Shown here: piece by piece, positions 1-57,700 of the stretch
Position numbering within the stretch: position 1 is the stretch's first letter
How the letters are laid out: the number at the start of each line of letters is the position of its first letter
From: Heteronotia binoei
Taxonomy: Eukaryota
Length of the DNA stretch: 64,000 bases
Assembly (NCBI RefSeq): GCF_032191835.1
Contig: NC_083233.1
Location: 49,104,001 to 49,168,000 of the forward strand
Reading direction: 5' to 3'
Notes under the pieces: model-generated
Told to the model about the DNA's origin: nothing
Database searches by the model: none
What the model saw: only the letters and a program-made list of their open reading frames with translations
Position numbers and translations under genes: made by a program

Positions 1-2
1 TT

Positions 3-131
3 TTGACCTGTACTATTATCCTTGAAGGGTCAGGAATGTTCTTCTACCTGTCCCTTCTAAAGACAAAAGGGAAATCAGTTGTGGAAATCACAGAAGAATT
101 TGAAGTATGGATTGTTTTATGCCAGGTCTAA
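3..131 (+). pseudogene. Degenerate terminal exon of an upstream SLC2A11-like (GLUT11-like) paralog; the rest lies outside the window
   Basis: Frame from position 3 reads LTCTIILEGSGMFFYLSLLKTKGKSVVEITEEFEVWIVLCQV*. It aligns by eye to the last exon of the intact paralog at 17362-17568 (GILGVSGVFIYLYLPETKGKSILEITLAFDK). PETKG is changed to LKTKG and the stop comes early (TAA 129-131). Confidence 0.7.
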
Positions 132-1398
132 CATCCATTTTGATGCATTCAGAGCTAGGACTGCTTATGATGGGGATTAGCAAAGTTAACCACACAAACA
201 GCATATTTGTGTGTCCTCAGCACATAAAAACTTGTTCCCAGCAGCAAAGTTGTCCAGTTCAATATGAATTAAGGATCCAGTGCTTTGTGCAAAAGGGGAA
301 TTTTTGTGCAAAAAACTACCCATCACAGTCCAGCAATTATGAGAGAAGCTGACCCTACTTTTTAGGCTGGTCATCATGTTATATAAGACTTCTTGGATGA
401 GGCAATGCCACAAAGGAAACAATATTGCTTTGTTTGAAATACCAGAACCCCAGGGTCATGCAATAGAAATGACAGCAGAGTTAAGACTGGAGATTAGTCA
501 CTACTTAGACATGCCTAAAGTCCATTCCTACACAATTCAATGATCACTTACATATTAATAAACATTTCCATGCCAGAAACCTCACCTACCTATTGGATTG
601 GACTAGATGCAACTAGCTGATGTACAATTAATCCAATGTCCTTCCAACTGCTGAATGTACTGATAAAAAATTAACTTTGGCCAGTTCGGTGCCAGGTCAT
701 GTTTGTCACACCAAAGAAAGAGGAGAACGAAATGGCAAATTGTGGGGGGGGGGTCACCCGCCCAAAGGGCAGCACTAGATATCTATGAGGAATGAAGAAG
801 TTCTCGTGCTCTCTGGGCTCAGGAAAAATCAGCCTCTTATTTTTCACCCATTAATTTCTATGCCATCTTTCAGGTCATAACCACCAGCTCATTATAAGTT
901 TATGAGACCTTTGACTTGGGTCAAGGCCTTTTTACGTGAGAGAGTGCCTTCCTTAAAGGTTGGAGTTCAGTCAGATTTGTCCTGAGTTTTCTGCAAACAA
1001 CACTCTACCCATCTCCCTCCATTTTCCATTTCACCGAGCTCCATGATCCCACCAGGGATCAAGATGCTTTATTCTAGAAGGAAGAGGCCACTGTGGAACA
1101 ACCTTGTCTATCACCTTTGCTACTTTTGATGTTACAACTTTAATTCTCAGAAGCTCACTGAAATGTCAGTCTTATCCATCATAAAATGCTTACTGTCGCC
1201 GTAATGCTTACTGGCAATTTGGAGGTGAATCTGCTAATCTACTTCCTTGATATATTCTGGTAACAACACAGGATTGCGCCTTCCTACTATTTCCATCACA
1301 GTAATAACCTGAAGATGCACAGAACAGTTACAGTAGATGTGTCTAAAACGCTGTTCACACCCACCTGTTAGATCCACTCACTTTCTGACAGATCACTA

Positions 1399-1695
1399 CC
1401 CTGTTTCCCTGAAAATAAGACCTACCCAAAAAATAAGGCCCAGCAGGATTTCTATGCATAAGCCCTACCCCGATAATAAGACCTAGTGATGGGCGTCGCA
1501 AAAAATTCAGGATAGGATTCCGGGTCTGGAGAGTTATGACAATGTTCCAGAAGATGACTTAACTGTATTTGAATAAATGTAGATTGTTGTATCATACTTA
1601 ATAAAAAATAAAACATCCCCTGAAAATAAGCCCTAGTGTGTCTTCTTGAGAAAAAAACAAATATAAGACAGTGTCTTATTTTCGGGGAAACACGG
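1399..1695. mobile_element. Tc1/mariner (Tigger/pogo-like) MITE
   Basis: TIRs CCCTGTTTCCCTGAAAATAAGAC / GTCTTATTTTCGGGGAAACACGG, flanked by TA at 1397-98 and 1696-97; no ORF. Confidence 0.8.
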
Positions 1696-2199
1696 TACAT
1701 GTGATGGCTTCCTCAGAGTGTATTTCAAATCACATTATTTTAGATATGAAGTCTTGAGGGTTACTTTACAAGGAAACTGGCATGGGAGGGTGGGAAAGAG
1801 GGAAGTTTATTTTACCTCCTTGGAAATAAAAGAAGGTTAAATTTCTCTTCTTTCCTCACTCTGGTTTTTTTCTTGATAAAACAGGGGCTGGGCTGCATTT
1901 CCAAAAGAACCAGAGCTTTTTTTTCTGCCAGAGCCCACAGGAGCGGAGCTCCGCCTGGGCTGGCCAGGGCTCTGGCTGGCCTGACTTGCCATGCAGCAGC
2001 AACGTGCTCCCAGGCCAGGTGGTGTGGCCTAATAGGCAAATGAGCTCCTGCTGGGCTTTTTCTACAAAAAAAGTACTGAAAAGAGCCAAGAACATTATTT
2101 AAATTTTCCTTGGAAGAAGCAATTGTCATGTGTAATTGAGACCTTAGTGGCAGAAGTATCCCTAATTTATTGCATGATGTAGGCTTCCCAACCCTCCCG

Positions 2200-2830
2200 C
2201 CCTGGCGGGGGGCCCCAGGATTTCCAGCCTCTTCCCCCTCTTCCCAAAAAACGGAAGCGGGGGGAGGGGGGGAAACGGCGCCAAGGAGCGTTTCCAAAGA
2301 TGCCGCCTCTTCTCCGTAGCTGCTCCTCTGGCAGGCGATGTTTGAACACAAGCCAGCCGGGCAGACGGTCAGCTGCACCGCGAGGCTCCCGAGCGGAACC
2401 ACACGCAGCTGACTGGGCCTCAGGCCGCTCCCTGCTCTCTGGGGGTGGGGGTCGCCCCTGGAAGGCTCTTTGGAGCAAAGCTGCTCCAGGAACAGGCGGT
2501 CGCTCTCGGCGTTCGACTACCTGGGCTGGGGGTCGTTGGCCGGCTGGGAACGATGCGCTCGGTGCGCTAAGCCTATAGGCATGCGCAGGAGGGCTGTGCG
2601 CGGGGAGGCGGGCGCATGCTCCGTGTGGCGCGTCGCGTCCTGGGACATGTCGGCGGTATCCAAGGTGGTGCTTGGGGTGACGGTGCTGCTGTCGGTCGGT
2701 GCCATGGCCGGCGTTCACATCCAGCAGAGCTGTCTCAGAGAGGCAAGTGGAGGCCCCTGCCCCGTTCGCAGGAAGGCGCCGGCGGAGCCCAAACCGCATC
2801 CCACCCCCCACTCCCGTCACGAGTGCAGGG
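2200..2830. promoter_or_regulatory. CpG island promoter with NRF1-like motifs
   Basis: GC- and CpG-rich; GCATGCGCA at 2579-87 and GCGCATGC at 2612-19 resemble the NRF1 palindrome and lie just upstream of the ATG at 2647. Confidence 0.7.
2647..2742 (+). CDS. PET117: PET117-like exon 1 (cytochrome c oxidase assembly factor N-terminus); exon 2 not found in the window
   Basis: 32 codons, MSAVSKVVLGVTVLLSVGAMAGVHIQQSCLRE, matching my recollection of the vertebrate PET117 N-terminus (MSRSSKVVLGLSVLLTAATVAGVHVKQQ...). Ends in phase 0 at GAG|GCAAGT, a consensus GC-type donor. Confidence 0.7.
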
Positions 2831-3164
2831 TCGCACAGCATTTGACCTTTGGAGTTCAATTATGCTTGTCACAGCCTTCATCTTGGCTCCACCCCTAATG
2901 TCTCCTGGCTCCACCCCCAAAGTCCCCAGATATTTCTTGAATTGGACTTGGCAACCCTAGCATGATGAATTGTTGGAAATTAATTACCCCCTACACCAGA
3001 TAAGTAGCCACATTAATCCATTGAAGTGTGTGTTAAGTGATGTCAAATTGCTTCCCTACCAAAAAAGCCCAGCAGGAACTGACTTGCATATTGGGCCACA
3101 CCCGATTCCAAGTCATTGGAACTGTGTTCCTGTGTGTTCCTGCTCAAAAAAGAGCCCTGCTTCC

Positions 3165-3540
3165 GACTTATAGCAACCTTATGAATTAATGTCCTCCTCT
3201 TGCAAACCAAGGGCTGTGGCTTCCTTGACTGAGTCAATCCATCTCATGTTGAGTCTTCCTCTTTTCCAGCTGCCTTCAACTTTTCCTAACAGTATTGTCT
3301 CTCCCAGGGGCTTCTGGCTTCTCATAATGTGACCAAAGTACGATAGCCTCAGTTTAGTAATTTTAGTTTCAAGGAAGAGCAGGCTTGATTTGATCTAGAA
3401 CCCACTTGTCTTTTTGGCACTCCACAGTATCCCTAAAACTCTCATCCAAGACCACATTTTGAATTAATCAACTTTCATCCTCTTCATTCTCCAGCTTTCA
3501 CATCCATACTTTGTAATGGGAATACTACAATAGTGTGAAT
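3165..3540 (-). mobile_element. RTE/BovB-like LINE fragment
   Basis: Resembles the RT region of RTE/BovB elements on the minus strand (cataatgtgaccaaagtacgatagcctcag...); recognised from memory, degraded. Confidence 0.5.
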
Positions 3541-3550
3541 TATCTTAATT

Positions 3551-4020
3551 AGGGCTTTTTTTTCTGGGGGAACATGGCAGTACGGAGTTCCAGAACCCCT
3601 TCATGGAAACAAAGTTCTCAAAAAATGTTTTAAAGTTCATGAGGGGCTGTTGTGTATTGGTTGTGACTGCTGTTTTGTTATATCTGTTACTTGAAGCATA
3701 CTTCATTGGCCTCCAGGAACCTGATGCCTACATTCCAACTGGCCATTTGGTTAGAACCAGCCAGTCGGGATGAGGCATTTATTTCAGGAAATGCAAATAA
3801 GGATCCTGGAGAGACCAATATGGTGGATTGCCACCCACATAAGGGGGCATGTTTACTCAGCCCAAATGGATATAAGGAGTGGTGTTGCCTGCTTGTGTTC
3901 AGTTCTGCTCTTGATCAATAAACGTTCTTTTTTACCTTAAGCTGGCTGAACTCACTCATTCATTTCTGCTTCGTTTCCCTCTTGAGAGTTCCAGCATCTT
4001 TTTCCAGAAAAAAAGCCCTG
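3551..4020. mobile_element. MITE with AGGGCTTTTTT...AAAAAAGCCCT termini and a ~400-bp internal segment
   Basis: Inverted termini agggcttttttttctgg / ccagaaaaaaagccct; same termini as the palindromic family at 1911, 3060, 8335, 41092, 49215 and 50915. Confidence 0.5.
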
Positions 4021-5129
4021 ATCTTAATCATTCAATTAAAATCAATGTGATAAAATCAGTAATGATATATACAACCACCAACGCAATATGTGAGTCACAG
4101 CTCACTCTGATGCAGATCAGTTTTCACTAATTTCAGTTTTTACTAAGTTCTACTTTTCCATGTGGCCCACGCTCTGGTGTTTCAGCAGGTACCTTAAGCC
4201 ATGCCTATTCCTCCTTCTGGTGTGAAGCCAGAGCCAAAGGATGAAACCAGGACCTAGCCTTGGTGTTGTCTAATAGTGTCACCACGACATGCTTCATTTT
4301 TGGGATTGACTTAGAAGCCTATGGAGCATCAGAGGAGCCAACCAGATAACTTTTTTATTAAACACTATTTTGGCTTTCTGTGCACAGCAGTACCATTTAT
4401 GAAATTTGTAAGCTGAAGTGCTACTTGTAATGTTTTTAGTCACGAGTGCACAGCAGCATTTTTGTAAATTGTAAGCTTCCAGTGTTGTTCTGCTATGAGT
4501 TTCCAGCTTGGAATCATGTATTGTAATATTGTAATATTTTCTTGGGTTGTAACCACCAACTCAATTTTCCTTTAGCTTTATAAACAATCATAAGCAGGGA
4601 TCATTTTGTAGAAAAATAGGTGGTAGAGCTCATCCAGGGATTGTTATGCAGCTACACCTACTATTCAATGGACAAGGTGGGGAGGAGGGGGAACCGTCAA
4701 AAAAGTTCTGGAGCTGTTCTCCTGTGAGCTCCTGCTGAATTCAAGGCATGATCATAAGTATAATTGAAATAGTAAAAAAGAAAGTGTGACATAGTAGATC
4801 CAGATGGGCAGTGTTGGTCTGAAGCAATAGAACAAAGCTGGAGTCTGGTAGCATCTTTAATACCCACAAAGTTTTATTCAGAATGTAAGTTTTGGTGCAA
4901 CAATTGATGGTTTTTCCCTTTGCAGTTTTTACATAGTGTACACTGAGGATCCCTATTATGCTGTAACCGCCAGGAGTGGAGATCTCCTGGGATTATAACA
5001 GAAAGCAGTGGAAGGTGGACTCAATGGTATTACACCCCATTGAGGTTCCTCCCCTCCTCAAACCCCGCCTTCCTCAGCCTCCACCCCACAAATATCCAGG
5101 TATTTCCGACTTTAAAAGAATTCTTACAT

Positions 5130-5720
5130 TAATACAGCGCTCTTCCCCCTGCACACGGGAAAAAAAAATATTAAACTCAACCGGAAGTGGGGATGTGATG
5201 ATGAGCACTCTCCCCTACTCTTCGTTTGGCTTCAGTACATCGCTGCTGGTGTTCCGTCGACGCACTACCTCGGAGCACTTTGGTTCCTGCGAGCATCCCG
5301 TGGGTTTGCTTGTTCAAAGGGCTTGAATGGGCTGATCAGTGTGTCCCATCTCGTGGTGGCAGAAGGCTGTCTTTCTCCACCCTCGGGTCTCTCAGTCTCG
5401 GGGAGGGGGAGGGGGGGAGAGCGGGACGCGGTCGGTCCCGGGCTATGAAGGCTGACAGCTTTACTGGCAGCCTCATTGGCCGTGGGCAATGGGTGGTCAC
5501 TGGCTGACCTGCCTGACCAGCCACTCCGAACTTCGCCCGAAAGTAGTTAATGGTCAACCCATGCAGTAAAATTTAATCGGGGCGCCCTGTGGCGGTTTCC
5601 GAGATGTGGAGGCGAAGCCGGCTGCTCCCAGAGATTTCCCAGTTGCTGCCCAGCCGCCCTCGTTGGAGATGGGGAGCTTTCGCTCCGACCTGGTGAGTCC
5701 CACTGACTTCCTCGTTTCTT
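5130..5720. promoter_or_regulatory. CpG island / promoter of the SLC2A11-like gene
   Basis: CpG-rich; ETS/GABP motif CCGGAAGTG at 5181-89; contains the first coding exon (5669-5692). Confidence 0.7.
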
Positions 5721-8700
5721 GCGGGAGAAAAATAGCCAGAAGCAATGCAATCCTCTGTAGAGATGCTCCAGTCTAAGCCCATTAGAAACAACCTGGAGCA
5801 GCCAACAGAACACAATGTTAGTTCCAGATGTGTGTTAATATGCTGCAGTAAAGTTAAACAGAAGTCCAGTGGTGTGAAGCTCGTTTAGTGGGCCTGTCAC
5901 TCTCTTTCAGCCTACCTACCTTATAGGGTTGTTGTGAAGATAAAAGGGAAAGAGAATGATGTATCCACTTTGAGATCCTTGGAGAAAGGGCAAGATTAGA
6001 AGTCTGCTACATAAATAGATGGCTGACAACATTTATTCTAGCCTAGTGCAAGTGTTTGTAAGTCAGCATTCACTTCATGAAATGCCTTACAGTGTACATC
6101 CATATATGCTTTATGCATGCATTATTAGCCTTTTGTGACATCAGATTTCTATTAGATTCAGTGTAGGATTGTACTATCATTCTGGCTGCCATCCTGGTTT
6201 CAGGTTTTACTGTAACACATGTGTGCATTTTCCTTGTGTGCAATGGCATCCTTATCAATAACTTTGCAGGACTTTTCAGGAAAGGATCCCCTTGTTCTAG
6301 AATACTTTTCTTTATCTGTAAAATGCTGGTGAGTAGTAGCGGGGAAGTAGCTGCAAGTAACTGAACTGATCTCAGGCTGTATGGGAGCTGGTGTAATTTA
6401 TTTTATTTTGCTTATTATCAGTCACTTTTTTCATCAACAAATATTGTACAACTGCTAGCATTTTTGAACTGTGCAAATATTCCTCTGAAACTGAACAGCT
6501 TGTAATTGAAAACAAACCCTGCCTTAGTGAACCTGCCCATGATAGGGTTACTCAGGAGAGCCAGTGTGATGATGAAGTGGTTAGAGTGTCAGACTAGGAT
6601 TTGGGAAAGCCAGGTTTGAATTTCTGCAAGCCTATAGAAGCTTGCGGGGTGTCCTTGAGCCAGTCACTTACCCTCTCAGCCTAACCTACCTAAAACAGAG
6701 GGTAACAGAACAATATAAGCTGCTGTGGATCTCTTTGGGGGAGAAAGATTAAAAGGAAGCAAAGAATTCACCAGTCCAGTAGATATGAAATGAAGCTGGT
6801 TCTTGCCAGTAGATGGCAACAGACACAAACAGTCAGAGAAGCATGTTTTCTCAAGCAATTTTTAAGAAGGTTTTGGGGCCGTCAGTTGTGTAATCAGCAT
6901 TAAAAGCATTTAGACGTAGCCCAGGTGTTTATAATGTTGCTTGGAAAAGTGACAAGGAGACCCAAAGTACTTAGAATGATGATCAACATGACAACACTTT
7001 TCATCTTCACATAATCAATCAAAAGTTTCCCTTGTTATCTATTCTCTTGTCTTAAATCTCTTATTTGCAAATGAATTAGCTGAGCATTTTAAAAGAGAAT
7101 ACGCATTGTAAATCCTAGCATGTTTAATTTCATTGGTGTAAGTTTTACTCATATACTCTTCTGTATCTTCATTTTCCTCTGTGAAGTTAGAAAATATATA
7201 ATTATGATGAGCAGGCATGAGGTGGACTCTCAATATGTTTTTTGTCTTTGTAGATCCAGTACCGAGGCCTATTTCAGATGATTTTAGTGCTAGGAATAGG
7301 TGGAAGCTTCCCTTATGGGTTCCATATTTCAGTAATCAACTACCCCTCCTCGGTAAGCTAATAGCATCTCTATGTCTCTTGGGATTGGATATTCAAGAGC
7401 ACTGAACATCTGTTTGACACTGTGTTTGTGATTCCCTTTTATGCCAATTTCCTGTTGTGAGAGTAGAAAAGAGCAAGAATCTAGTAGCATCTTAAAGACC
7501 CTGTCACAAATTTTGTTAGTCTTTAAGGTGCTACAGGATTCTTGCTCTTTTCTGCTGCTACAGACAGAGACAAACATGATGGTCAACATGACTTTTCATC
7601 TTCACATAATCAATAAAACATCTCTCTTGTTATCCACCCTTGTGGGAGAGAAAATAAGTATCTTGAGTAAAGTCTAAAAAACATTCTGCCAAAAATTTGC
7701 AAGAATTTCTTGTAGGCTTCTGTGAGCAAACTATGGTCCTAATTTCAGGCCACCTTAGTGCCTTTTATCTATTATATTTTCAAAGTATTCATCAAAATGT
7801 TTAGCATAGCATACCTACTGTAATGGTCAGTAGTCCTTGGAGCTTCTGCATAAGAGACTTCCTAAGCTTGCAACACAGGCAGACTGCAAAATCAGAATGC
7901 ATGCATTTATGGGAAATGCAGTGGCTCCCTGTGAGCTTCAAAGCACAGTTCAAGGAGTTGACTTTGAGCATTCTTATTACCCCTAAATTCCAATATCTGT
8001 TAATTTGACCAATTTGGCCCTTCATTGGTTAATAATGTGTGCTTCTGGCTTTTTAAAGAAATGGTTTTCAGGAAATGCTTCAATGGCATATGGATTTTAT
8101 TTATTGATTTGGTAGATTTATATTCCGCCCTTTCCCATGTGGGCTCAGGACAGATTACAGTCACAATAAAACAATTAAAATACAACAATAGCTTAATAAT
8201 ATGCAATTAAAAGAACAAAACACAATAATATATACACAGGCAGGCAGGCACAATTTATAGATTAAGAAGACATAGTATTCGGCCCATTGTGGGGGAGGAC
8301 AATAGATGGTATAAACAGTAAGATCAGAGCCTTCTTTGTAGAAAAAGTCCAGCAGGGCCTCACTTGCATATTAGGTCACACCCCCTGTCACCAAGCCAGC
8401 CGGAACTGTGTTCCTGTGCATTCCTGCTCAAAAAAAAGCCCTGAGTAAGATGGAAGGATGTCCATTTGCCTCAACCAAAAGCCTGGTGGAACAGCTCTGT
8501 CTTACAGGTCCTAATGACAGCTGAGCAAATGCTAGGCTCAGTATTTTTGTTATATGACTCTGAGAGGGTTTTTTGTTGTTATAAATCTGGAAGCTGCCTC
8601 GAGGTTTGTTTGTGCTGGAAGATGCAGGTTATAAATACTTTAAATAAATAGGCTATCTGGCTTTTCTGCATGTCTCTGATTAGAAAAAGCAAACAAAACT

Positions 8701-11700
8701 CATGAGAGGCTGTGACAGCCTGAAGATGTATCTAAACAGACAAAATACTGATTCTCAGAGTGTCCTGATCACTTCACTTGAATGGCAACTAAAAATGGTA
8801 AAATAATATGATATTGTAAAACATGTAATTTTTGTTTACAGTGTATTAAAACGTTTATCAATGAAACCTGGATGGAGCGGCATGGTTCACCCCTCTCTGA
8901 AGAGACTATCTTGTTAATGTGGTCCTTCATCGTGTCCATTTATGGCTTAGGAGGCCTGCTAGGAAGTGTTTCCTGTGGGTACCTTACCACAAGATACAGG
9001 AAGTAAGTATTTCCAATGCCTGGAACATACAAGTCTTCTCAACACTGTTTCAGAAACAGGACTCTTCAGAAATCACCCTCCTGCCTTATTATTTGGGTTG
9101 CATTACTAAAAAGGGACTCTCCATAGCATCTTGGCCTCACAAAAAGGTATCCTTCTATATTCACACTCCTCTACAGTACATTCCTGAGCCTAGCAATAAT
9201 GTCTGGAAGTCTCTACCCCACATGATGTGAGTTACCTGAAGCTGGAGTTGGACCCTGGTTGTGTTGGGATATAAGGAGGAACAGAGAACATTTACCACAG
9301 GAATCAACAACCTTTTGTGATTAACAAGCCAAGCTACAGCAAAATTCAGAATGACATCAACAAAGAGCCAGTATCAGAAAATCCAGTTGCCTAAATGAGA
9401 ACATAAAAATTAACATTGATCATTGACATGCTTGTTAATAATCCATAAAGTTTCTGCAATCCAAACCCTAATTATTGTGAGTATTTTATTAAGCAATGGC
9501 ACACACAAGGCCTTGCAATATGTAATACATGTACACAGGAGCACCCTATGCAGTTTTTTCAGTGTTCTGGCATACAGCTGTACATGATGTGTACTAGGTT
9601 GGATTCCTGGCAACTGTTCACCTGTATCATTTCCCTTTCTGCAAAGCATCTTCCAGAAGCCCTTTATTCCCATAAAAATTTTGCCTGCCATTCCCTTCAC
9701 ATACCAGGTATTATAGCATCACTTATTCTTCTCTAATATGCCCTCACTTACAGATTTCATTTCATTTTTTTTATTGTTGGTTCTATACTGCACCATATTT
9801 GGCTGTAGAACCGTAGGTTGCAGGCCCTAGATTTACCAAATGATAGCTTTGTGCAATATTCATTTGATGTTAGTTGTTTATATTATCCCACCAACTGCAA
9901 GGAAGAATTTTTCTTCACTTTTGTACTTGATCAAAATATGAGGAAGGAAAACCAAGGAGTCCTAAGATTTCCCTCCCTGGAGGATGCAGATGGCTGGCTT
10001 ACCAAGAAGCTCTGGTACATTGTGGTAAACCATCATCTGATTCTACACTTAATCATGCCACAAAGTGAGAAAGCATGCTGTTATAAATTGGAGCAATCAA
10101 GATGGTGCTCAAGAACCCACTGGGAATATCTGATAAGAACATAAGAGAAGCCATGTTGGATCAGGCCAATGGCCCGTCCAGTCCAACACTCTGTGTCACA
10201 CAGTGGCCAAAAAAAAATTATATATATACACACACTGTGGCTAATAGCCACTGATGGACCTCTGCTCCATATTTTTATCCAATCCCCTCTTGAAGCTGGT
10301 TATGCTTGTAGCCGCCACCACCTCCTGTGACAGTGAATTCCACATGTTAATCACCCTTTGGGTGAAGAAGTACTTCCTTTTATCCGTTTTAACCTGACTG
10401 CTCAGCAATTTCATCGAATGCCCACGAGTTCTTGTATTGTGAGAAAGGGAGAAAAGTACTTCTTTCTCTACTTTGTAAACCTCTATCATGTCACCCCGCA
10501 GGCAACGTTTCTCCAAGCTAAAGAGCCCCAAGCATTTCAACCTTTCTTCATAGGGAAAGTGTTCCAACCCTTTAATCATTCTAGTTGCTCTTTTCTGCAC
10601 TTTCTCCTTTTTTTGCCTTTTTAATTGCCTTTTTAATGTTATACTGACTTTGTTGCAGAAAGAAGTGCCAGATGTTCACCAACTTAATCATGCTAGTTGC
10701 TGCACTGTCCATGGCTTTTAGCAAGATGGCCAAATCCTTTGAGATGATCTTCCTTGGGCGCCTCCTTTGTGGAATTGGCATTGGTATGCAGAAAACATCA
10801 TGGCTGCCATAACACTGTGCAGGGCCATTTACAAAAGATTTGTATCCTTGTGGTCAGTCAGATTGACTCCTTAGGGTGTTAGTTTAAGTCCATATACAAC
10901 TCAATTGATGACTTGTAAAATTGTATCTATCTGACTAGCTGACTGAACAGCAGATGAGAGCAGAGAAGCTTTCCTCTGCTGGAGATACAGCTTTCTTCAG
11001 TGAGTTATGCAATGGAAATGTGGAAGAGGGTATTATTATGGGATGGCACCCTTGCTGCCATTTCCAACCTCAAATGTTTGGCTCTGCTTCTCTCCCAAGC
11101 CGTCTGCTGACCACCTACTCCTCTTGCATTCTCTTTCCCAAGGGTTTGTTTTCATGATCAGGAATTCCAGACAGCCAGTATAGTGCAGTGGTTAGAATGT
11201 AAGACTTGGGGGTTGGGGGAGCCTTAATTCAAATATACCTCCAAATCATGAATCTCATGATTCTCTCAGCCTAATCTACCTCATAATGTTGTGAATATAA
11301 AATGGAGGAGGGGAGAACAATGTAAACTACTGAAAGGTCAAAACCATTAAATCAGAAACCATTGTCTAAACAAGCAAGAAATCCTTGTTCTCAAGTAACT
11401 TACTATAAATTTAACTGCAGCCACTCTGTCATAAATGTATTGGATGTCAAAAATTGGATGTCATAAATTCACAAGTATTGGAACCTCAAGACACTTGTGG
11501 GGGGATATTTCAACATAAGTTTAGCTATATATTGAACTATTCACAAGTCACCTTTCAGAGGTGTAAAGCCAATAAAAGGCCAGTTCTGACTGACTGCTAA
11601 GTCAACCAGTACTTATATGCATAATGATATAACAGTTGAACAAAGTTGGAGTCAAGTGTACCTTTAAGACCAACGAAGTTTTATTCAGAACGTAAGCTTT

Positions 11701-14700: not shown

Positions 14701-17568
14701 AGGTTCATATTTTATTCTTTGTACTTCCTGTTTATGAATATATAGCATTACTGAGCATCATACTATATTTCATGGCCATTTTGCACATTATATGGAAGCA
14801 AACACATATTTGCCATTCACTGCATACTCTTTCAACTGACCATGTTCACCTCTCCTCTTCCCCCCTCTGAAAGTTGCAACCATTTTTGGGTCCTGACCCA
14901 CAGTTTGAAAACCCATCAGGTAAAGAAATGCTCCATGATACATGCACAAAGACTCCTTGCTACTGCTTGTGCAGAACATTTCCCTGCTTTCATGGGAAAA
15001 AATGGGGGCAGAGAATTCCTGTATATGTGAAACAGTGTGTGTGCATGCTGGATTCAGCCCTCAATTTATGAAACAACTCAAGTTTCTTTTTCTTCCCTTT
15101 TGCCTTTTCAGATCTACTTTTACTCTTTTGAAGTCTTCCGCACAGCCAAGTTTGAAGAAGCCCTCATCCCATACATATCCTTGGGTGTTGGTCTTTGTGA
15201 GTGTATCTCATCTGTATTGTGTGTAAGTTCAGAGCGTGCAGAAGACACTTAAACAGATTGCTTTTCTTGCTCCTGTTTTTACAAAGTCAGGTGAACAGTT
15301 AATGTCCTCACTCCACAGTCTCTTGATTTCCTTTTCCAGAGCTCCCTTATTGAGCGTTTTGGCCGGAAGGTGCTGCTATGGGGAGGCTATGCATTGATGG
15401 TTTTGGTGCTTGCTCTGCTCACACTAACTCTCTCACTCCAAGTAAGTAGAATTAGCCCTACTGTTGAAGAGGGTGCCTCAAACGGCAGATTTGGGGAGCC
15501 ATTAAGACTGGTGCAGTGAGGGAGGCATCCTGACCTGTGACGACACAATCCAAATACTCCATTTCAATGTATCTCTTTGTAGCCTCAAGAAATTGGCTCT
15601 CTCGCCCTGAACTTTAGCTATCTTGGCAACAACTTCACTTAACCAATCACATTTTTCCACTCCTTTCTCACTCTAGCATCGCTTCTTTTGGATGCACTAC
15701 TTCAGTGTCATTCTCATCTTCTTGTTCGTTCTCTTCTATGGAATTGGACCATGTAAGTACCTTAGCATAGAGCATGATAGGGTCCAGCCCAGGAGTTTTA
15801 AAGCCTAGCTTGAATGTCTGAGTAAGTGTAAACAGCCACCTAGGGGTACAGATCCCTGGATAACAAAGTAGGAGTCAAGTAACACCTTTAAGACCAACAA
15901 AGTTTTATTCAGAATGCAAGCTTTCATATGCACGTATACTTCTTCAGATGAGGGAATGGGGTACAGTGAGCAGAAATACATATAGCTGGTGAGTTAAGAG
16001 TATAAACTGATACAAAGTTAGGATCAAATGGCAAATGGTCTTCCAATTTATTACACTATTTTGCCATTTGATCCTAACTTTGTATCAGTTTAAACTCTTA
16101 ACCCACCAGCTATATGTATTTCTGCTCACTGTACCCCATTCCCTTGTCTGAAGAAGTATTCGTGCATACGAAAGCTTACATTCTGAATAAAACTTTGTTG
16201 GTCTTAAAGGTGATACTTGACTCCTACTTTATTCTACTGCTTCAGACCAACATGGCTGCCCATCTGGATTGATCCCTGGATAAATTTACTGTCTGGTACA
16301 GAAAGCCTCTGGCCACTTGGTCAAGAGGAGAGGGAGAAATGACTTGCTATTGCTAGTCTGCTAACAACTGTACAGCTTAGCTACTTCTGGATTAAGCTAC
16401 ATCCCTGTGATTCTTCCACAACCCTCTCTGGTATAATTGTCATGCTGTGGACCTGTGTTTGTGTGAGAGGGGAAGAGAGGGAGATTGGGAATGGTGCTCA
16501 GTGGATGATTAATATATCAAAGATATTACATTTTAGGGGTATGTAAAAGGCCTGCAGGCTGTGGCTGTTCCACTTCATCTACCCCCTCTCCCCATGGATA
16601 AGCTGCAGTACTATGCTGTGGGCCAACTAAAAAAATTTGCTGGGGGTGGTGGTGGATGCAGCCCACTTTCCTAAATGCCCATGTCTCAGCCACATATAAT
16701 ATAGGATGTAGAAGAGCAATGAGGAATCCATGTGCTATGGCATTTGTTCTTTTCTGCTTTCCCCAGCTGGTGCCACAATTTCTGTCATGGTTGAGATCTT
16801 CAGTCAGGCCTTCCGCCCCTCAGCTTTTGTGATTGTGGGGTTTATCAACTGGATGGGTCTCTTTCTGCTCGGGATGATCTTCCCATTCCTTGTGGTAAGA
16901 GATTTGAAACTGGCAATCAAATGAGCAATTTGCACAAAACATTTGGAGAAGCATGAGGTGCATAGACAGCTTCAAGAGGGGGTTAGATAAAAATATGGAG
17001 CAGAGGTCCATCAGTGGCTATTAGCCACAGTGTGTGTGTGTATATATATATATATATACACACACACACATACATTGGCCACTGTGTGACACAGAGTGTT
17101 GGACTGGATGGGCCATTGGCCTGATCCAACATGGCTTCTCTTATGTTCTTATGTGCTCTGTTGTTGTTAAGGCACTGTAATAATATAGTAGCTTGAAGCT
17201 GAAAGACAGGATATTTTTCATCTGAATTCCTGATCAATCCCTAAAAATTCAGAGTGTGGTCCTAATCTAAACATTGGACATAAACTTTAGAAACTTTTGG
17301 GCTTTGAAGATGCTTTAAAGGGAATTCTTATTTTTCTTTTCTCCCTAATTTCTGTTTTCAGGAATATCTTGGACCCTTTTGCTTCCTGATTTTCATGGGA
17401 ATTCTTGGTGTTTCAGGGGTATTCATCTACCTGTACCTGCCAGAAACAAAGGGGAAATCTATCTTGGAAATTACATTGGCGTTTGATAAGTTAAATTACA
17501 GCAAGAAGAAAGCTTTCCCTACAGAGAACAGTTTCCCTAATGCAACAGTATTTTGCACCAAGCTTTGA
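5669..17568 (+). CDS. SLC2A11-like facilitated hexose transporter (class II GLUT, GLUT11-like), 12 exons, 499 aa
   Basis: join(5669-5692,7254-7352,8842-9002,10659-10783,11741-11870,13400-13548,13905-14092,15112-15222,15340-15441,15677-15752,16767-16894,17362-17568) = 1500 nt, open frame, GT-AG introns. Motifs: GIGGSFPYG, N-glycosylation site INET, YVGEISPKKLRG, PDSPPYLL, QLCGINA, ERFGRK, GIGP, PETKGK. Confidence 0.93.
6555..6765 (+). mobile_element. tRNA-derived squamate SINE (Squam3-like)
   Basis: Head agccagtgtg...gtggttagagtgtcagactagga...ggtttgaat and body ctctcagcctaacctacc. Related copies at about 5860-6020, 11172-11335, 17700-17870, 33215-33490, 50330-50440 (-) and 61950-62165. Confidence 0.7.
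10134..10605 (-). mobile_element. 5'-truncated CR1 LINE 3' end
   Basis: ORF 10241-10600 (-) encodes the CR1 ORF2 C-terminus ([31 protein letters not shown]); the 3' tail appears as taagaacataagagaag on +. Confidence 0.9.
12550..12790 (-). mobile_element. L2-clade LINE 3' UTR fragment
   Basis: Reverse complement of the 3' UTR of the L2 copy at 62870-63090, by direct comparison within the window. Confidence 0.75.
15864..16270. mobile_element. Penelope-type (PLE) pLTR insertion with inverted 5' copy: a 171-bp-arm palindrome with a 13-bp TSD
   Basis: Arms 15865-16035 and 16060-16230 (8 mismatches in 171 by hand alignment), 24-nt loop. Perfect direct repeat GATCCCTGGATAA at 15851-63 and 16271-83. 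Confidence 0.85.
16145..16180 (+). ncRNA. Minimal type I hammerhead ribozyme motif (PLE-associated)
   Basis: UGU CUGAAGA A GUAU-ucgugc-AUAC GAAA GCUU ACA: helix I UGU:ACA, intact core with one extra A, 4-bp helix II, palindromic AGCU helix III, putative CUU site. Activity not demonstrated. Confidence 0.65.
16965..17157 (+). mobile_element. CR1 3' end fragment
   Basis: Same 3' UTR as the copies at 10134 and 21449, with a (TG)n(TA)n(CA)n tract and a ttctcttatgttcttatg tail. Confidence 0.85.
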
Positions 17569-21448: not shown

Positions 21449-22605
21449 GGAACATAAGAACATAAAAGAAGCCATGTTAGATCAGGCCAATGGCCCATCC
21501 AGTCCAACACTCTGTGTCACACAGTGGCAAAAATTTTTATATATACACACACACACACACACTGTGGCTAATAGCCACTGATGGACCTCTGCTCCATATT
21601 TTTATCTAAACCCCTCTTGAAGGTGGCTATGCTTGTGGCCGCCACCACCTCCTGTGGCAGTGAATTCCACATGTTAATCACCCTTTGGGTGAAGAAGTAT
21701 TCCTTTTATCCATTTTAACCTGTCTGCTCAGCAATTTCATCGAATACCCACGAGTTCTTGTATTGTGAGAAAGGGAGAAAAGTACTTCTTTCTCTACTTT
21801 CTCCATCCCATGCATTATCTTGTAAACCTCTATCATGTCACCCCGCAGTTGACGTTTCTCCAAGCTAAAGAGTCCCAAGCGTTTCAACCTTTCTTCATAG
21901 GAAAAGTGTTCCAGCCCTTTAATCATTCTAGTTGCCCTTTTCTGGACTTTCTCCAATGCTATAATATCCTTTTTGAGGTGTGGCGACCAGAACTGCACAC
22001 AGTACTCCAAATGAGACCGTACCATCGATTTATACAGGGGCATTATGATACTGGCTGATTTGTTTTCAATTCGCTTCCTAATAATTCCCAGCATGGCGTT
22101 GGCCTTTTTTATTGCAAATGCACACTGTTTTGACATTTTCAGTGAGTTATCTACCACAACCCTAAGATCTCTCTCTTGGTCAGTCTCTGCCAGTTCACAC
22201 CCCATCAACTTGTATTTGTAGCTGGGATTCTTGGCCCCAATGTGCATTACTTTGCACTTGGCCACATTGAACCGCATCTGCCACGTTGACGCCCACTCAC
22301 CCAGCCTCAACAGATCCCTTTGGAGTTCCTCACAATCCTCTCTGGTTCTCACCACCCTGAACAATTTAGTGTCATCCGCAAACTTGGCCACTTCACTGCT
22401 CACTCCCAACTCTAAATCATTTATGAACAAGAGCATGGGACCCAGTACCGAGCCCTGCGACACCCCACTGCTTACTGTCCTCCACTGCGAAGACTGCCCA
22501 TTTATACTCACTCTCTGCTTCCTATTACTCAGCCAGTTTTTGATCCACAAGAGGACCTGTCCTTTTACTCCATGACTCTCAAGCTTTCTAAGGAGCCTTT
22601 GATGA
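21449..22605 (-). mobile_element. 5'-truncated CR1 LINE with reverse transcriptase region
   Basis: ORF 21678-22550 (-), 290 aa, with QGSVLGP and FADD motifs. C-terminal frameshift (KRNTSSPKG versus KRKYFFTQR in the copy at 10241); CR1 tail at 21449. Confidence 0.93.
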
Positions 22606-54700: not shown

Positions 54701-57700
54701 CTGATGTGTATTTTCTTTCCATGCTTCCCCCACAATTTGGAATTTCTGGTTTAATTTTTTTCCTGAGTGACCAGCAAAAGCAATTATCAGTATAAAGATT
54801 GCAAGAGGAGAGTGGGTACCTGGAGCAGTGCAAATGTGAGGAGGGGCAGTGGGCACTTAGAAAGAGGCAGAAGAGGTGTTCCATCACCTCACAGCTAGAG
54901 ACACACCCTCACTAAATTGCATTTCCAGCATTCCTTAGGAGACACCAGGCTGCGATGGCTACAGTTTTATAATAGCCGTTAAGCACCAGAATATTAAACA
55001 CAAATTTGGCTGTGATGCCGAGAGGTGTGTGCAGAGCTGTTTGCACAAGCAAGATTCAGTAAGCCTTGAGTATGCAGCATGAGCCTGCTTGCCCAGCTCT
55101 CTCCAAAGAGAGGGTGAGGCACACATTCTCTTCCCATAAGAGGAGATTCGGGCATGCCATTTTAAAAATCAGAATTCCATCCCTCTTCATTTGCTTATAT
55201 TTCTGTTTACAGTGCAAATATGACCTTGCAGAATCCAAAGGGCAGCTGATGTTGTGGAGATTCTATTCTGCTTACCCAACCTGTGCACACAAACTGTGAC
55301 CTCTTCCAAAGAAATTGTTGGAGCCCTGAGAGGAGCTGCTCTGTTGCTCCAGAGATGAGATTGGCTTCTGATTTTCCTATGTGAAGGACTAAAGATAAGA
55401 CATCTTGCCCTTGTACTTTGCCTTCTGGGCCAGTCCTCTTGCCAGATCCTGCTCTGGAAATCAGTTTAGAACAGTCTCTTTCCATCTGTCTGTCTCTCTA
55501 ATGCAGGGATCACTACCAGGCCACAATTATTTGAGGGATACCTGAGTAGTGCACTTTGGCTGTTACGGAACTAAAAAATGACCTGTTACAGAGATGTCTG
55601 TGATTATGAAACACAACAGCCTGATTATAAAATGTGAAGGTTCACTATGAAGGACAGACAGACCCTGGGGTGTACATCCAGCTACCCACCATGGGAAGAA
55701 AAAAGTTGCATTACATCCATCTTCAACCCAGTGTCATAATTTTTACCATCTCCTAGAAAAATTGTTTGCCTTGCTTGTTTCCAGTGTAGAATCAGGTCTT
55801 CCTTGATTTTTTGGATCTGGACAGATTTTCAAGATCACTAGATGGATACTTGGAAATGGAGAACTGTTTAACTAGAGCCTCTGAAAAAATGTGCACATGT
55901 GGGCACACTTGCCTTGCCTCTACTCCGACTCTAGACTGTTGTTTTCCTTTGTTTTTAGAGCAGCTGCGCAAAATGAATGTGGTAAAGAAAGTTCCTGTCT
56001 TGAGGGATGAGGCCTTTTGCTTATCAGAATGGTAAGAAGGCCACAAAGGAGGAATTCTTTGACCCATAACCTCATAATATGACCCATAGGCTACTTCCCC
56101 ATGACAGATTTTCTCTGCCCTGGCTCTCAAAATGGTATAGGTATTTTTGGAACATTCGCATGATGTGGTCATTTTCCTTCTGTCTCCTTTTGTGCTTTTC
56201 TCTAGTCTGCCCCAGTGATTCCCATATCTGCTTTTCTCCTACCTTTCCAGAGAGAGAGGGTTGCCAGGTCTGTATTGGAAAATACCTGGAGACTTTGGGG
56301 ATGAAGCTGGGAGAGGGCAGGGGAAGGGAGGGGCCTCAGCATAGTACAATGCTGTAGAGCTCAACCTTCAAAGCAGCCATTTTCTCCAGGAGAGCTGATC
56401 TCTGCCAGCTGGGGATCAGTTGTAAAAGCAGGAGATCTCCAGGCCCCATCTGGAGGCTAGCAACCCTATGAGAGCAGGTTTGCCTACAGTGTGGACAGGA
56501 AGAACTGTTTCTCAAACTCCTCCCCCAATCTCTATTATCTCTCAGTATTCCCTTGCATTTGTATTCCCCGCAACCATCACCCCCAGGCTTCTCACTGGCT
56601 TTAAAAAAACACTCAGATGTGGGTATACCTACTAGCATAATTTTTATGTCAGTGATGAGTGCACCCCAGGGGATCATCCTGGTGTGGAAGCAGCCTTGAG
56701 AATGCAATATTGAGACAGGCAATACTCAGTATTGTAGTGAGCCAATAATAATTTGAGGACAAGGAGGGATATATAAATGTGCAGAAAAGAACAAGAGTCC
56801 AGTAGCACCTTAAAGACTAACAAAATTTGTGTCAGCTTTTGTGAATCACTGCTCACAGACAAACACAGCTGCCCATCTTGGTCTATAAATCTGTACAGAA
56901 ACCCTCCCCAGCCACTTTCATTCTTGGATTTGGGCAAAACATTTTGTAGGAGAGGAAGGGTGTTCTACAGCTGGGGGGGTAGCTATAAAAACAATTTAAT
57001 TCTGGCCTTATGATACAAATCCTCCAGACTTTAGAAGATACCATCCTGGTGTTTAGGACTGCAACAGGGTAGAGGGGAAGTTGTAGTCAGGTGGCTGAGT
57101 CATGCTTCTAAAATAGCTTTATGCAAGCAAGTCTTTATTGGAGGGACTTTAACTGAGCAAGCTGCCCATTTAATTGGACAGCTGACTACACTGGTTCAGA
57201 GACAAATGTCAGCTATAATCTTATTTCTCTCCTCCCTCTTTGTCTTCCCTTACTCTCTTGGTAGCATCGCAATCCTTCTGTATCTGAGCCGCAAGTACAA
57301 CACTCCAGACCACTGGTATCCATCTGACATACAAAAACGAGCAAAGGTGGATGAATATCTCTCATGGCACCAGACAAACATCCGATCCAATGCTCCCAAG
57401 ACAATGTGGATCAAGGTGAGGGATCTGAAGGGTGCCCTGTGCCCTCCATTGCTTGGCACAGAGTCATGACGGTACAGGAAAAGCTGAGGTCCTCTTTCCC
57501 TTCCCCATTCTGTGTTTCTTGGTCTACTGATTTAACCCCTAAGGTTTACTAGAATGAACTTGAATTCTTTTCAGGAATGGCAAATGTCCATTCATCCCCC
57601 TCTTGCATATTTTCTTCTGTACACCTCCTCACTACCACACTACTCTCTTCCTCCCCATGCACAGTCAATGTTGACCCTCTATTGCCTCTCCTGTTTGGGT

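What the first reader, a model, noticed from the sequence alone, without database searches (positions are those of the whole stretch)
2560..2748. Orphan PET117 first exon and NRF1-type promoter sitting between two SLC2A11-like paralogs
Seen: an intact 32-codon PET117-like exon with donor and NRF1-like motifs in a CpG island. By eye I found no PET117 exon 2 (RL..GV.RD.ERQ..K.EN) anywhere in the following 61 kb. The exon ends in phase 0, and transporter exon 2 (7254) starts in phase 0. Established: PET117 is a two-exon complex IV assembly gene normally next to KAT14, not in the SLC2A11-MIF cluster. Inference: a transposed promoter plus exon that may splice in frame to the transporter, giving a chimeric GLUT with an extra N-terminal hydrophobic segment or a captured housekeeping promoter.
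Basis: partly seen in the sequence, partly recalled or inferred. Interest (0 to 1): 0.75.

Follow-up and report, generated by a model that had tools for sequence, protein, structure and literature searches.

The report
Stray copy of PET117's start
This is a young, partial DNA copy (promoter, first exon and a stub of intron) of the mitochondrial assembly gene PET117, dropped next to a sugar-transporter gene in Bynoe's gecko. The complete PET117 gene sits intact on another chromosome, so the copy is most likely an ordinary gene fragment, and whether it feeds a hybrid transporter transcript could not be tested.

Summary
Window 2647-2742 (+) is an intact 32-codon PET117 first exon (Pfam PF15786, E 5.9e-6). 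It ends in phase 0 at a GC donor and lies in a CpG island holding the window's only two NRF1-core octamers. No exon 2 and no KAT14 occur anywhere in the window.

The window is Heteronotia binoei chromosome CM063335.1 (100% identical to a fetched locus). The same assembly has a complete two-exon PET117 beside KAT14 on chromosome CM063338.1. Window about 2335-2845 is therefore a paralogous partial copy, 94-95% identical to its parent: 312 bp of promoter, exon 1 and about 100 bp of intron.

The copy is absent from the matching spacer in Paroedura picta, Gekko kuhli and Sphaerodactylus townsendi. It lies inside a repeat-rich block of about 1.9 kb specific to Heteronotia. It arose at DNA level, not as a retrocopy, and is too diverged from the parent to be a misassembly.

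The in-frame splice to transporter exon 2 (7254) is geometrically possible but unsupported. No sequencing run was listed. The annotated products are 499 and 400 aa, with no roughly 523-aa chimera. Nothing indicates selection on the copy.

Verdict: an ordinary lineage-specific gene fragment that may still act as an orphan promoter. The chimera remains a minority possibility.

The parts
2335..2646 (+). Copy of the PET117 promoter (312 bp upstream of the ATG), the core of a CpG island
   Evidence: 95.1% identical to L001 9689-10000, the region upstream of the intact H. binoei PET117. CpG observed/expected is 0.81.
2579..2586 (-). NRF1-type core octamer GCGCATGC
   Evidence: One of only two exact matches in the 64 kb, with 0.38 expected. 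The site lies in a block conserved in the PET117 promoters of three gecko sequences.
2612..2619 (+). NRF1-type core octamer GCGCATGC
   Evidence: It lies 28 bp upstream of the ATG.
2647..2742 (+). Copy of PET117 exon 1: 32 codons, ATG to a phase-0 end, encoding the hydrophobic N-terminal segment
   Evidence: Pfam PF15786, E 5.9e-6. It is 93.8% identical in DNA and 90.6% in protein to the parental exon, with 6 base and 3 residue differences. Mean Kyte-Doolittle hydropathy over 19 residues reaches 2.14.
2743..2748 (+). GC-type splice donor (GCAAGT)
   Evidence: Identical to the donor of the intact PET117 genes of Heteronotia and Sphaerodactylus, whose introns end in ...tttcag.
2743..2845 (+). 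Remnant of the 5' end of PET117 intron 1, where homology to the parent ends
   Evidence: The alignment to L001 10097 to about 10160 is 93.6% identical where aligned, with 33-bp and about 16-bp insertions. Nothing matches the rest of the 1.77-kb parental intron or exon 2.
2846..2960 (.). Dispersed-repeat piece abutting the end of the PET117 homology
   Evidence: 91.3% identical to L001 4864-4750 in reverse orientation. Weaker partial matches occur at window 56257-56314 and L001 8329-8358.
1400..3343 (.). Heteronotia-specific block of about 1.9 kb (repeats plus the PET117 piece) in the spacer upstream of the transporter
   Evidence: Paroedura L004 8412|8443 corresponds to window 1399|3343. Gekko kuhli L005 8472..8706 corresponds to window 1352..4066. 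Inverted copies of one repeat family lie at 2021-2061 and 3062-3102.
5669..5692 (+). Native exon 1 of the SLC2A11-like transporter (8 codons) in its own CpG island
   Evidence: Sequence. It is identical to the start of the annotated 499-aa product P0122, and the same start is kept in the Paroedura, Sphaerodactylus and G. kuhli orthologs.
7254..7352 (+). Transporter exon 2, the first annotated acceptor downstream of the PET117-type donor, phase 0
   Evidence: Sequence. tblastn of P0122 residues 9-42 gives 97% identity.
18..104 (+). Relic copy of a transporter last exon, the only trace of the upstream paralog in the window
   Evidence: 58.6% identical to the last exon of the downstream gene. Orthologous relics are present in G. 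kuhli and Sphaerodactylus, with a weaker match in Paroedura.

Best explanation
Window about 2335-2845 is a lineage-specific, DNA-level partial duplicate of the 5' end of PET117. It comprises the CpG-island promoter, exon 1 and about 100 bp of intron 1. It was copied from the intact PET117-KAT14 locus on chromosome CM063338.1 of Heteronotia binoei into the spacer upstream of an SLC2A11-like gene on chromosome CM063335.1.

Shown: the copy cannot make PET117, because exon 2 is missing, and the parental gene supplies that function.

Inferred: the copy is most likely a selectively neutral gene fragment that still has what a promoter and first exon need (a CpG island, two NRF1-type cores, the ATG and the ancestral GC donor). 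It may therefore fire at some level as an orphan promoter. Any spliced product would most simply join the first downstream acceptor, transporter exon 2 at 7254, in frame.

My odds:
- Partial duplicate with an intact parent elsewhere: above 0.95.
- Transcribed at all: about 0.5.
- In-frame chimeric mRNA at a detectable level: about 0.2.
- A selected function: about 0.05.

How the piece was copied is not resolved. It is embedded in repeats, and no target-site duplication or transposon ends could be assigned.
For: - Window 1-27568 equals L003 4333-31900 (H. binoei GCA_032191835.1, CM063335.1) with no mismatch.
- The same assembly encodes the 80-aa PET117 (P0001) as a compact two-exon gene of 2.0 kb. 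A KAT14-like acetyltransferase gene starts 118 bp downstream, on CM063338.1. Sphaerodactylus has the same arrangement.
- DNA homology between window and parent covers only 2332-2770, continuing with indels to about 2845.
- No exon 2 and no KAT14 exons are in the window.
- The copy differs from the parent by 24 substitutions and several indels, so it is a separate locus.
- The piece is absent from the orthologous spacer in Paroedura, G. kuhli and Sphaerodactylus, whose flanks align colinearly across the empty site.
- It includes promoter and intron sequence, so it is not a retrocopy of the mRNA.
- Promoter, exon and intron are about equally diverged: 95.1, 93.8 and 93.6% identity.
- Changes polarised with Sphaerodactylus fall on both copies: about 8 on the fragment and 5 on the parent.
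- The annotated transporter products are 499 and 400 aa only.
Against: - The ORF, the ATG and the GC donor are all intact. The island keeps a CpG observed/expected of 0.81 against 0.87 in the parent. Both NRF1-type cores are kept. These are compatible with continued use.
- With only about 5.5% divergence, intactness is also the neutral expectation, so this is weak evidence for use.
- CpG columns differ 3.8 times as often as other columns. That is less than the 10-fold expected for methylated DNA (P = 1.4e-4) but compatible with 5-fold, so the methylation state is undecided.
- No read data could be consulted, so neither transcription nor the assembly at this point was checked independently.
Confidence: 0.82

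Rival explanations
1. The copy is a working alternative promoter and first exon of the SLC2A11-like gene. Transcripts start in the captured NRF1-type CpG island and splice from the GC donor at 2743 to exon 2 at 7254. They encode a transporter whose first 8 residues are replaced by the 32-residue hydrophobic PET117 N-terminus.
For: - The copy is on the same strand as the transporter, 4.5 kb upstream of the first annotated acceptor. Both exon ends are in phase 0.
- The donor is identical to one that works in the parental gene.
- The CpG island and both NRF1 cores are retained.
- Human SLC2A11 uses three alternative first exons (PMC12347752).
- A Gekko japonicus gene model of 710 aa (P0199) joins upstream exons to the orthologous exon 2, so this acceptor is at least modelled as taking upstream donors.
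Against: - No chimeric product of about 523 aa is in the protein cluster or on record for the gene.
- No RNA run was listed.
- The native 8-codon exon 1 is conserved in all four geckos.
- The copy is confined to one lineage.
- The copy has 3 residue changes in 32 codons and no sign of constraint.
- An extra hydrophobic segment ahead of TM1 could disturb the transporter's topology or targeting (inference).
Confidence: 0.12
2. The exon is an assembly artefact: reads of the true PET117 locus were wrongly joined into the SLC2A11-MIF region.
For: The homology ends abruptly next to repeats. No reads could be laid on the region.
Against: - The copy differs from the parental locus in the same assembly by 24 substitutions and several indels. 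Misplaced reads would be near-identical.
- There is no N in the window.
- The flanks are colinear with three other geckos.
Confidence: 0.03
3. It is the real first exon of PET117, with exon 2 lying more than 61 kb away or on another scaffold.
For: The exon, ATG and donor are intact.
Against: - A complete compact PET117 whose exon 1 differs from this one exists elsewhere in the same genome, and its exact product is the annotated protein.
- Gecko PET117 introns are 1.3-1.8 kb.
- The intron homology stops after about 100 bp.
Confidence: 0.01

Closest known systems
PET117 (cytochrome c oxidase assembly factor; Pfam PF15786), here the H. binoei gene XP_060109568.1 next to KAT14
   Same: The promoter, exon 1 (N-terminal hydrophobic segment) and GC donor are 94-95% identical to the parental gene. 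The human gene is likewise two exons and 81 aa (PMC5429353).
   Different: It lacks exon 2 (residues 33-80, profile positions 26-67) and the KAT14 neighbour, so it cannot encode PET117.
Partial (DNA-level) gene duplicates, that is gene fragments carrying a promoter and first exon, the raw material of chimeric genes
   Same: It is a copy of only the 5' end of a gene, including non-transcribed and intronic DNA. It was placed upstream of an unrelated gene on the same strand, the parent is intact, and the copy is lineage-specific.
   Different: No transcript or fusion product has been shown here. Classic examples recalled from memory (for instance Drosophila chimeric genes) have expression evidence.
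Alternative first exons of SLC2A11/GLUT11 (human exons 1A, 1B, 1C)
   Same: A short first exon would replace the extreme N-terminus and join exon 2 in frame (PMC12347752).
   Different: This one is foreign, adds a 32-residue hydrophobic segment, and its use is unproven.
Orphan CpG islands (CpG islands away from annotated gene starts)
   Same: It is a CpG-rich island (observed/expected 0.81) with transcription-factor motifs, not attached to a complete gene.
   Different: Its origin is known (a copied housekeeping promoter). Its methylation and activity are unknown.

Membership tests
PET117 gene (PF15786) | N-terminal hydrophobic segment matching the family profile | tested here: met
   Profile positions 2-25, E 5.9e-6, 26.8 bits against a cut-off of 27. 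90.6% identical to H. binoei PET117 residues 1-32.
PET117 gene (PF15786) | Charged C-terminal two thirds (exon 2, profile positions 26-67) | tested here: not met
   tblastn with residues 33-80 of two gecko PET117 proteins gives a best E of 0.12 in the window, on both strands. Nothing is found in L003 either.
PET117 gene (PF15786) | Conserved position immediately upstream of KAT14 | tested here: not met
   KAT14 exons of L001 and L002 find each other but find only repeats in the window. The parental loci have KAT14 118 bp downstream.
Partial DNA-level gene duplicate | An intact parental gene elsewhere in the same genome | tested here: met
   The window is identical to GCA_032191835.1 CM063335.1. 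PET117 lies on CM063338.1 of the same assembly.
Partial DNA-level gene duplicate | Homology includes promoter and intron, so it is not an mRNA retrocopy | tested here: met
   312 bp upstream of the ATG and about 100 bp of intron align to the parent.
Partial DNA-level gene duplicate | Empty site at the orthologous position in relatives | tested here: met
   Absent in Paroedura, G. kuhli and Sphaerodactylus, with colinear flanks.
Partial DNA-level gene duplicate | Distinct from the parent, so not a misassembled copy | tested here: met
   24 substitutions in 447 aligned bases, plus several indels. Not checked with reads.
Alternative first exon of the SLC2A11-like gene (chimeric transcript) | Same strand, usable donor, and phase compatible with exon 2 | tested here: met
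Alternative first exon of the SLC2A11-like gene (chimeric transcript) | Junction reads or cDNA joining 2742 to 7254 | not testable with these tools
   No run was listed for window 2300-2900, so read laying could not be used.
Alternative first exon of the SLC2A11-like gene (chimeric transcript) | An annotated product carrying the PET117-type N-terminus | tested here: not met
   The gene's longest product on record is 499 aa. Cluster members are 499, 400 and 710 aa, and none carries PET117-like words.
CpG-island promoter with NRF1 sites | CpG observed/expected above 0.6, GC above 0.5, length above 200 bp | tested here: met
   0.81, 0.68 and 491 bp.
CpG-island promoter with NRF1 sites | NRF1 recognition sequence | tested here: inconclusive
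   Two exact core octamers, the only ones in the window. The full 12-mer is matched only with 2 mismatches and is not above chance. Binding was not tested.
CpG-island promoter with NRF1 sites | Transcription starts or an unmethylated state | not testable with these tools
   No reads were available. The CpG decay test is ambiguous, at 3.8-fold.

The most novel reading that the evidence does not exclude
In Heteronotia the captured PET117 promoter and first exon is used as a new start for the SLC2A11-like gene. This would put a sugar/urate-type transporter under a respiratory-gene (NRF1-type) promoter and give it an extra N-terminal membrane or mitochondrial-anchor segment. It would be a recently born chimeric gene with a known parent, a known age bracket and an empty site in sister genera.
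Probability: 0.1. Interest if true: 0.6.

Novelty: new member of a known kind. Interest (0 to 1): 0.3.

Why it matters
As it stands, this is a well-documented example of a common event, a partial gene duplication that leaves an orphan promoter and first exon. It mainly matters for annotation: it should not be called a PET117 gene, and it could seed spurious fusion models. If the piece turns out to be transcribed into the neighbouring transporter, it would be a young chimeric gene whose parent, insertion site, empty sites in relatives and every diagnostic base are already known. That would make it a convenient case for studying how a captured housekeeping promoter rewires a neighbour.

Tried and rejected
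- Read evidence: the look-up of sequencing runs on window 2300-2900 listed none. Read laying, the junction test and a DNA-depth test for the paralog were therefore impossible.
- Earlier notes of the scan held nothing on PET117 or KAT14, nor by sequence.
- Exact look-up of the 83-aa read-through ORF (2647-2898) found nothing on record.
- Exon 2 by motif search and by tblastn: absent.
- KAT14 in the window: only repeat hits.
- Transposon capture: inverted copies of one repeat family flank the piece at 2021-2061 and 3062-3102. The family is common in the window, and no ends or target duplication could be defined, so this is left open.
- Two-piece templated insertion from the parental locus: window 2846-2960 matches L001 4864-4750 in reverse at 91%, close to the fragment's divergence. 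It also has weaker repeat-like matches elsewhere, so this is undecided.
- Origin of the extra GC-rich 2140-2331: no match to the parental locus or the other loci.
- CpG-decay test for germline methylation: 3.8-fold excess at CpG columns, rejecting 10-fold but not 5-fold, so it is inconclusive.
- Constraint test with Sphaerodactylus as outgroup: too few changes to decide.
- Rfam and tRNA scans of window 1-8000: nothing in the block.
- The full NRF1 12-mer is not above chance.
- The third large protein search was not spent on more PET117 orthologs, because the empty sites already bracket the age.

Full report
**What is there.** Window 2647-2742 on the + strand reads as 32 codons from an ATG with no stop.
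- The peptide matches Pfam PET117 (PF15786) at E 5.9e-6 and 26.8 bits. This is just under the curated 27-bit cut-off and covers profile positions 2-25 of 67.
- A word-indexed protein search with the read-through ORF returned only two proteins. Both are 80-aa PET117 homologs of geckos: Heteronotia binoei (P0001, 91% identical) and Sphaerodactylus townsendi (P0002, 88%).
- tblastn of these against the window finds residues 1-32 at 2647-2742 (E 1.6e-13). Nothing better than E 0.12 is found for residues 33-80 on either strand.
- The exon ends after a complete codon. It is followed by GCAAGT, a GC-type donor.
- The working PET117 genes of Heteronotia and Sphaerodactylus have exactly the same GC donor, and their introns end in a normal ...tttcag acceptor. 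The donor is therefore ancestral, not decayed.
- The exon sits in a CpG island: GC 0.68 and CpG observed/expected 0.81 for 2332-2822, against 0.16-0.21 in the flanks.
- The NRF1 core octamer GCGCATGC occurs only twice in the 64 kb, at 2579-2586 and 2612-2619, with 0.38 expected. The full 12-mer consensus is matched only with two mismatches, which is not above chance.

**Where the window comes from, and the parental gene.**
- In both geckos PET117 is a compact two-exon gene of 2.0 and 1.6 kb. A KAT14-like acetyltransferase gene starts 118 bp downstream.
- A profile-free search with the transporter's last exon, followed by a word search with a full-length representative, led to the H. binoei SLC2A11-like protein P0122.
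- Its locus L003 (GCA_032191835.1, chromosome CM063335.1) is identical to window 1-27568 without a single mismatch.
- The window is therefore H. binoei. Window base 1 is CM063335.1 position 49,104,001, and the exon lies at 49,106,647-49,106,742.
- The intact PET117 (L001) is in the same assembly on a different chromosome, CM063338.1, at about 18.97 Mb.
The parental locus exists, and exon 2 is there, not here. KAT14 exons are not in the window.

**Extent and divergence of the copy.**
- BLASTN aligns window 2332-2770 to L001 9689-10124.
- The multiple alignments carry the homology, across insertions of 33 bp and about 16 bp, to about 2845. It stops there against a dispersed-repeat piece at 2846-2960.
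- Nothing in the window matches the remaining roughly 1.7 kb of the parental intron.
- Identity to the parent is 95.1% in the promoter, 93.8% in the exon and 93.6% in the intron stub. Both copies are about 62% identical to the Sphaerodactylus promoter.
- The copy carries 24 substitutions and several indels relative to the parent. That rules out misplaced reads of the parental locus.
- Because it includes non-transcribed promoter and intron, it arose at DNA level and not from mRNA.

**Age and insertion site.**
- The orthologous SLC2A11-like to MIF loci of Paroedura picta (L004), Gekko kuhli (L005) and Sphaerodactylus townsendi (L006) were fetched.
- None of them contains PET117-like coding or DNA sequence.
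- Their intergenic DNA aligns colinearly with the window on both sides. Paroedura 8412|8443 corresponds to window 1399|3343. G. kuhli 8472..8706 corresponds to window 1352..4066.
- The PET117 piece therefore lies in a block of about 1.9 kb that only Heteronotia has. The rest of that block is repeat-like.
- Flank identity between Heteronotia and G. kuhli is 81-88%, against about 94.5% between copy and parent. This fits an insertion after these genera split.
- The copying mechanism is unresolved. Inverted copies of one common repeat family flank the piece. A 115-bp stretch next to it matches, in reverse, a site 5 kb upstream of the parental gene at 91%. Neither a transposon structure nor a target duplication could be established.

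**Relation to the transporter.**
- The downstream SLC2A11-like gene is on the same strand. Its native exon 1 is 5669-5692 (8 codons, GT donor), in its own CpG island. Exon 2 starts at 7254 in phase 0 and ends at 7352.
- The first exon encodes a segment hydrophobic enough for a membrane helix, with a 19-residue hydropathy mean of up to 2.14.
- Human SLC2A11 is known to use three alternative first exons (PMC12347752).
- A G. japonicus model of 710 aa joins upstream exons to the orthologous exon 2. The geometry is therefore plausible.

**Direct support for the splice is lacking.**
- No sequencing run was listed for the region, so junctions, starts and DNA depth could not be examined.
- The gene's longest product on record is 499 aa. 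The 90% protein cluster holds only H. binoei X1 (499 aa) and X2 (400 aa, starting inside exon 4), and no chimera of about 523 aa.
- The native 8-codon start is conserved in all four geckos.

**Selection and activity.**
- Six base differences in the exon give three residue changes.
- Polarised with Sphaerodactylus, about 8 changes fall on the fragment and 5 on the parent. The rest are ambiguous.
- An intact 32-codon frame after about 6% divergence is the neutral expectation.
- CpG columns differ 3.8 times as often as other columns. This rejects a 10-fold methylation-type excess (P = 1.4e-4) but not a 5-fold one.
- The island is therefore well preserved, but its germline methylation state is undecided.

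**Verdict.**
- The 'orphan, transposed promoter plus exon' reading is supported, and can now be stated as a fact about the H. binoei assembly.
- The 'chimeric GLUT or captured promoter' reading remains an untested minority possibility.
- The most likely state is a young, selectively neutral gene fragment that may still behave as an orphan CpG-island promoter.
- The human PET117 gene is likewise two exons and 81 aa on chromosome 20 (PMC5429353).

Noticed in passing
window 18-104 (+); L006 7774-7914; L005 4386-4520; L004 6344-6407: A relic copy of a transporter last exon sits between the two SLC2A11-like paralogs. It aligns at 81-88% DNA identity in G. kuhli and Sphaerodactylus, with a weaker 77% match in Paroedura. 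A 710-aa Gekko japonicus gene model (P0199) runs through its counterpart into exon 2 of the downstream gene. It could be an old pseudo-exon or an alternative terminal exon of the upstream paralog.
   Followed up: partly
L001 10097-11866; L002 10097-11439; window 2743: PET117 intron 1 is a GC-AG intron (donor GCAAGT) in both gecko PET117 genes and in the copy, a conserved non-canonical donor.
   Followed up: partly
window 7454-7564: A long near-perfect hairpin in transporter intron 2 gives sub-threshold matches to many unrelated microRNA families (best 32 bits against a gathering score of 117). It is most likely a palindromic repeat, not a microRNA gene.
   Followed up: no
window 10133-10217, 17075-17155, 21452-21533; L001 19530-19748: A 67-bp unit tandemly repeated in the KAT14 region of the parental locus recurs at 95-99% identity in introns of the transporter and of MIF. 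It appears to be a young dispersed satellite-like repeat.
   Followed up: no
window 3182-3394 (-): A 71-residue open frame resembles, from memory, the C-terminal end of a LINE ORF2 of RTE/BovB type. Part of it (3343-3394) lies in DNA shared with Paroedura. This was not tested against any library.
   Followed up: no
window from about 26157 onward (L003 30489-31900): A DEAD-box helicase gene (688-aa product; Pfam DEAD, ResIII, Helicase_C) follows MIF on the same strand in all four geckos.
   Followed up: no
window about 10660 onward (transporter exon 4): RefSeq isoform X2 of the transporter (P0200, 400 aa) starts inside exon 4 and would lack the first transmembrane helices. UniRef lists two records with the X1 sequence, whose 5' exons could not be seen with these tools.
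   Followed up: no
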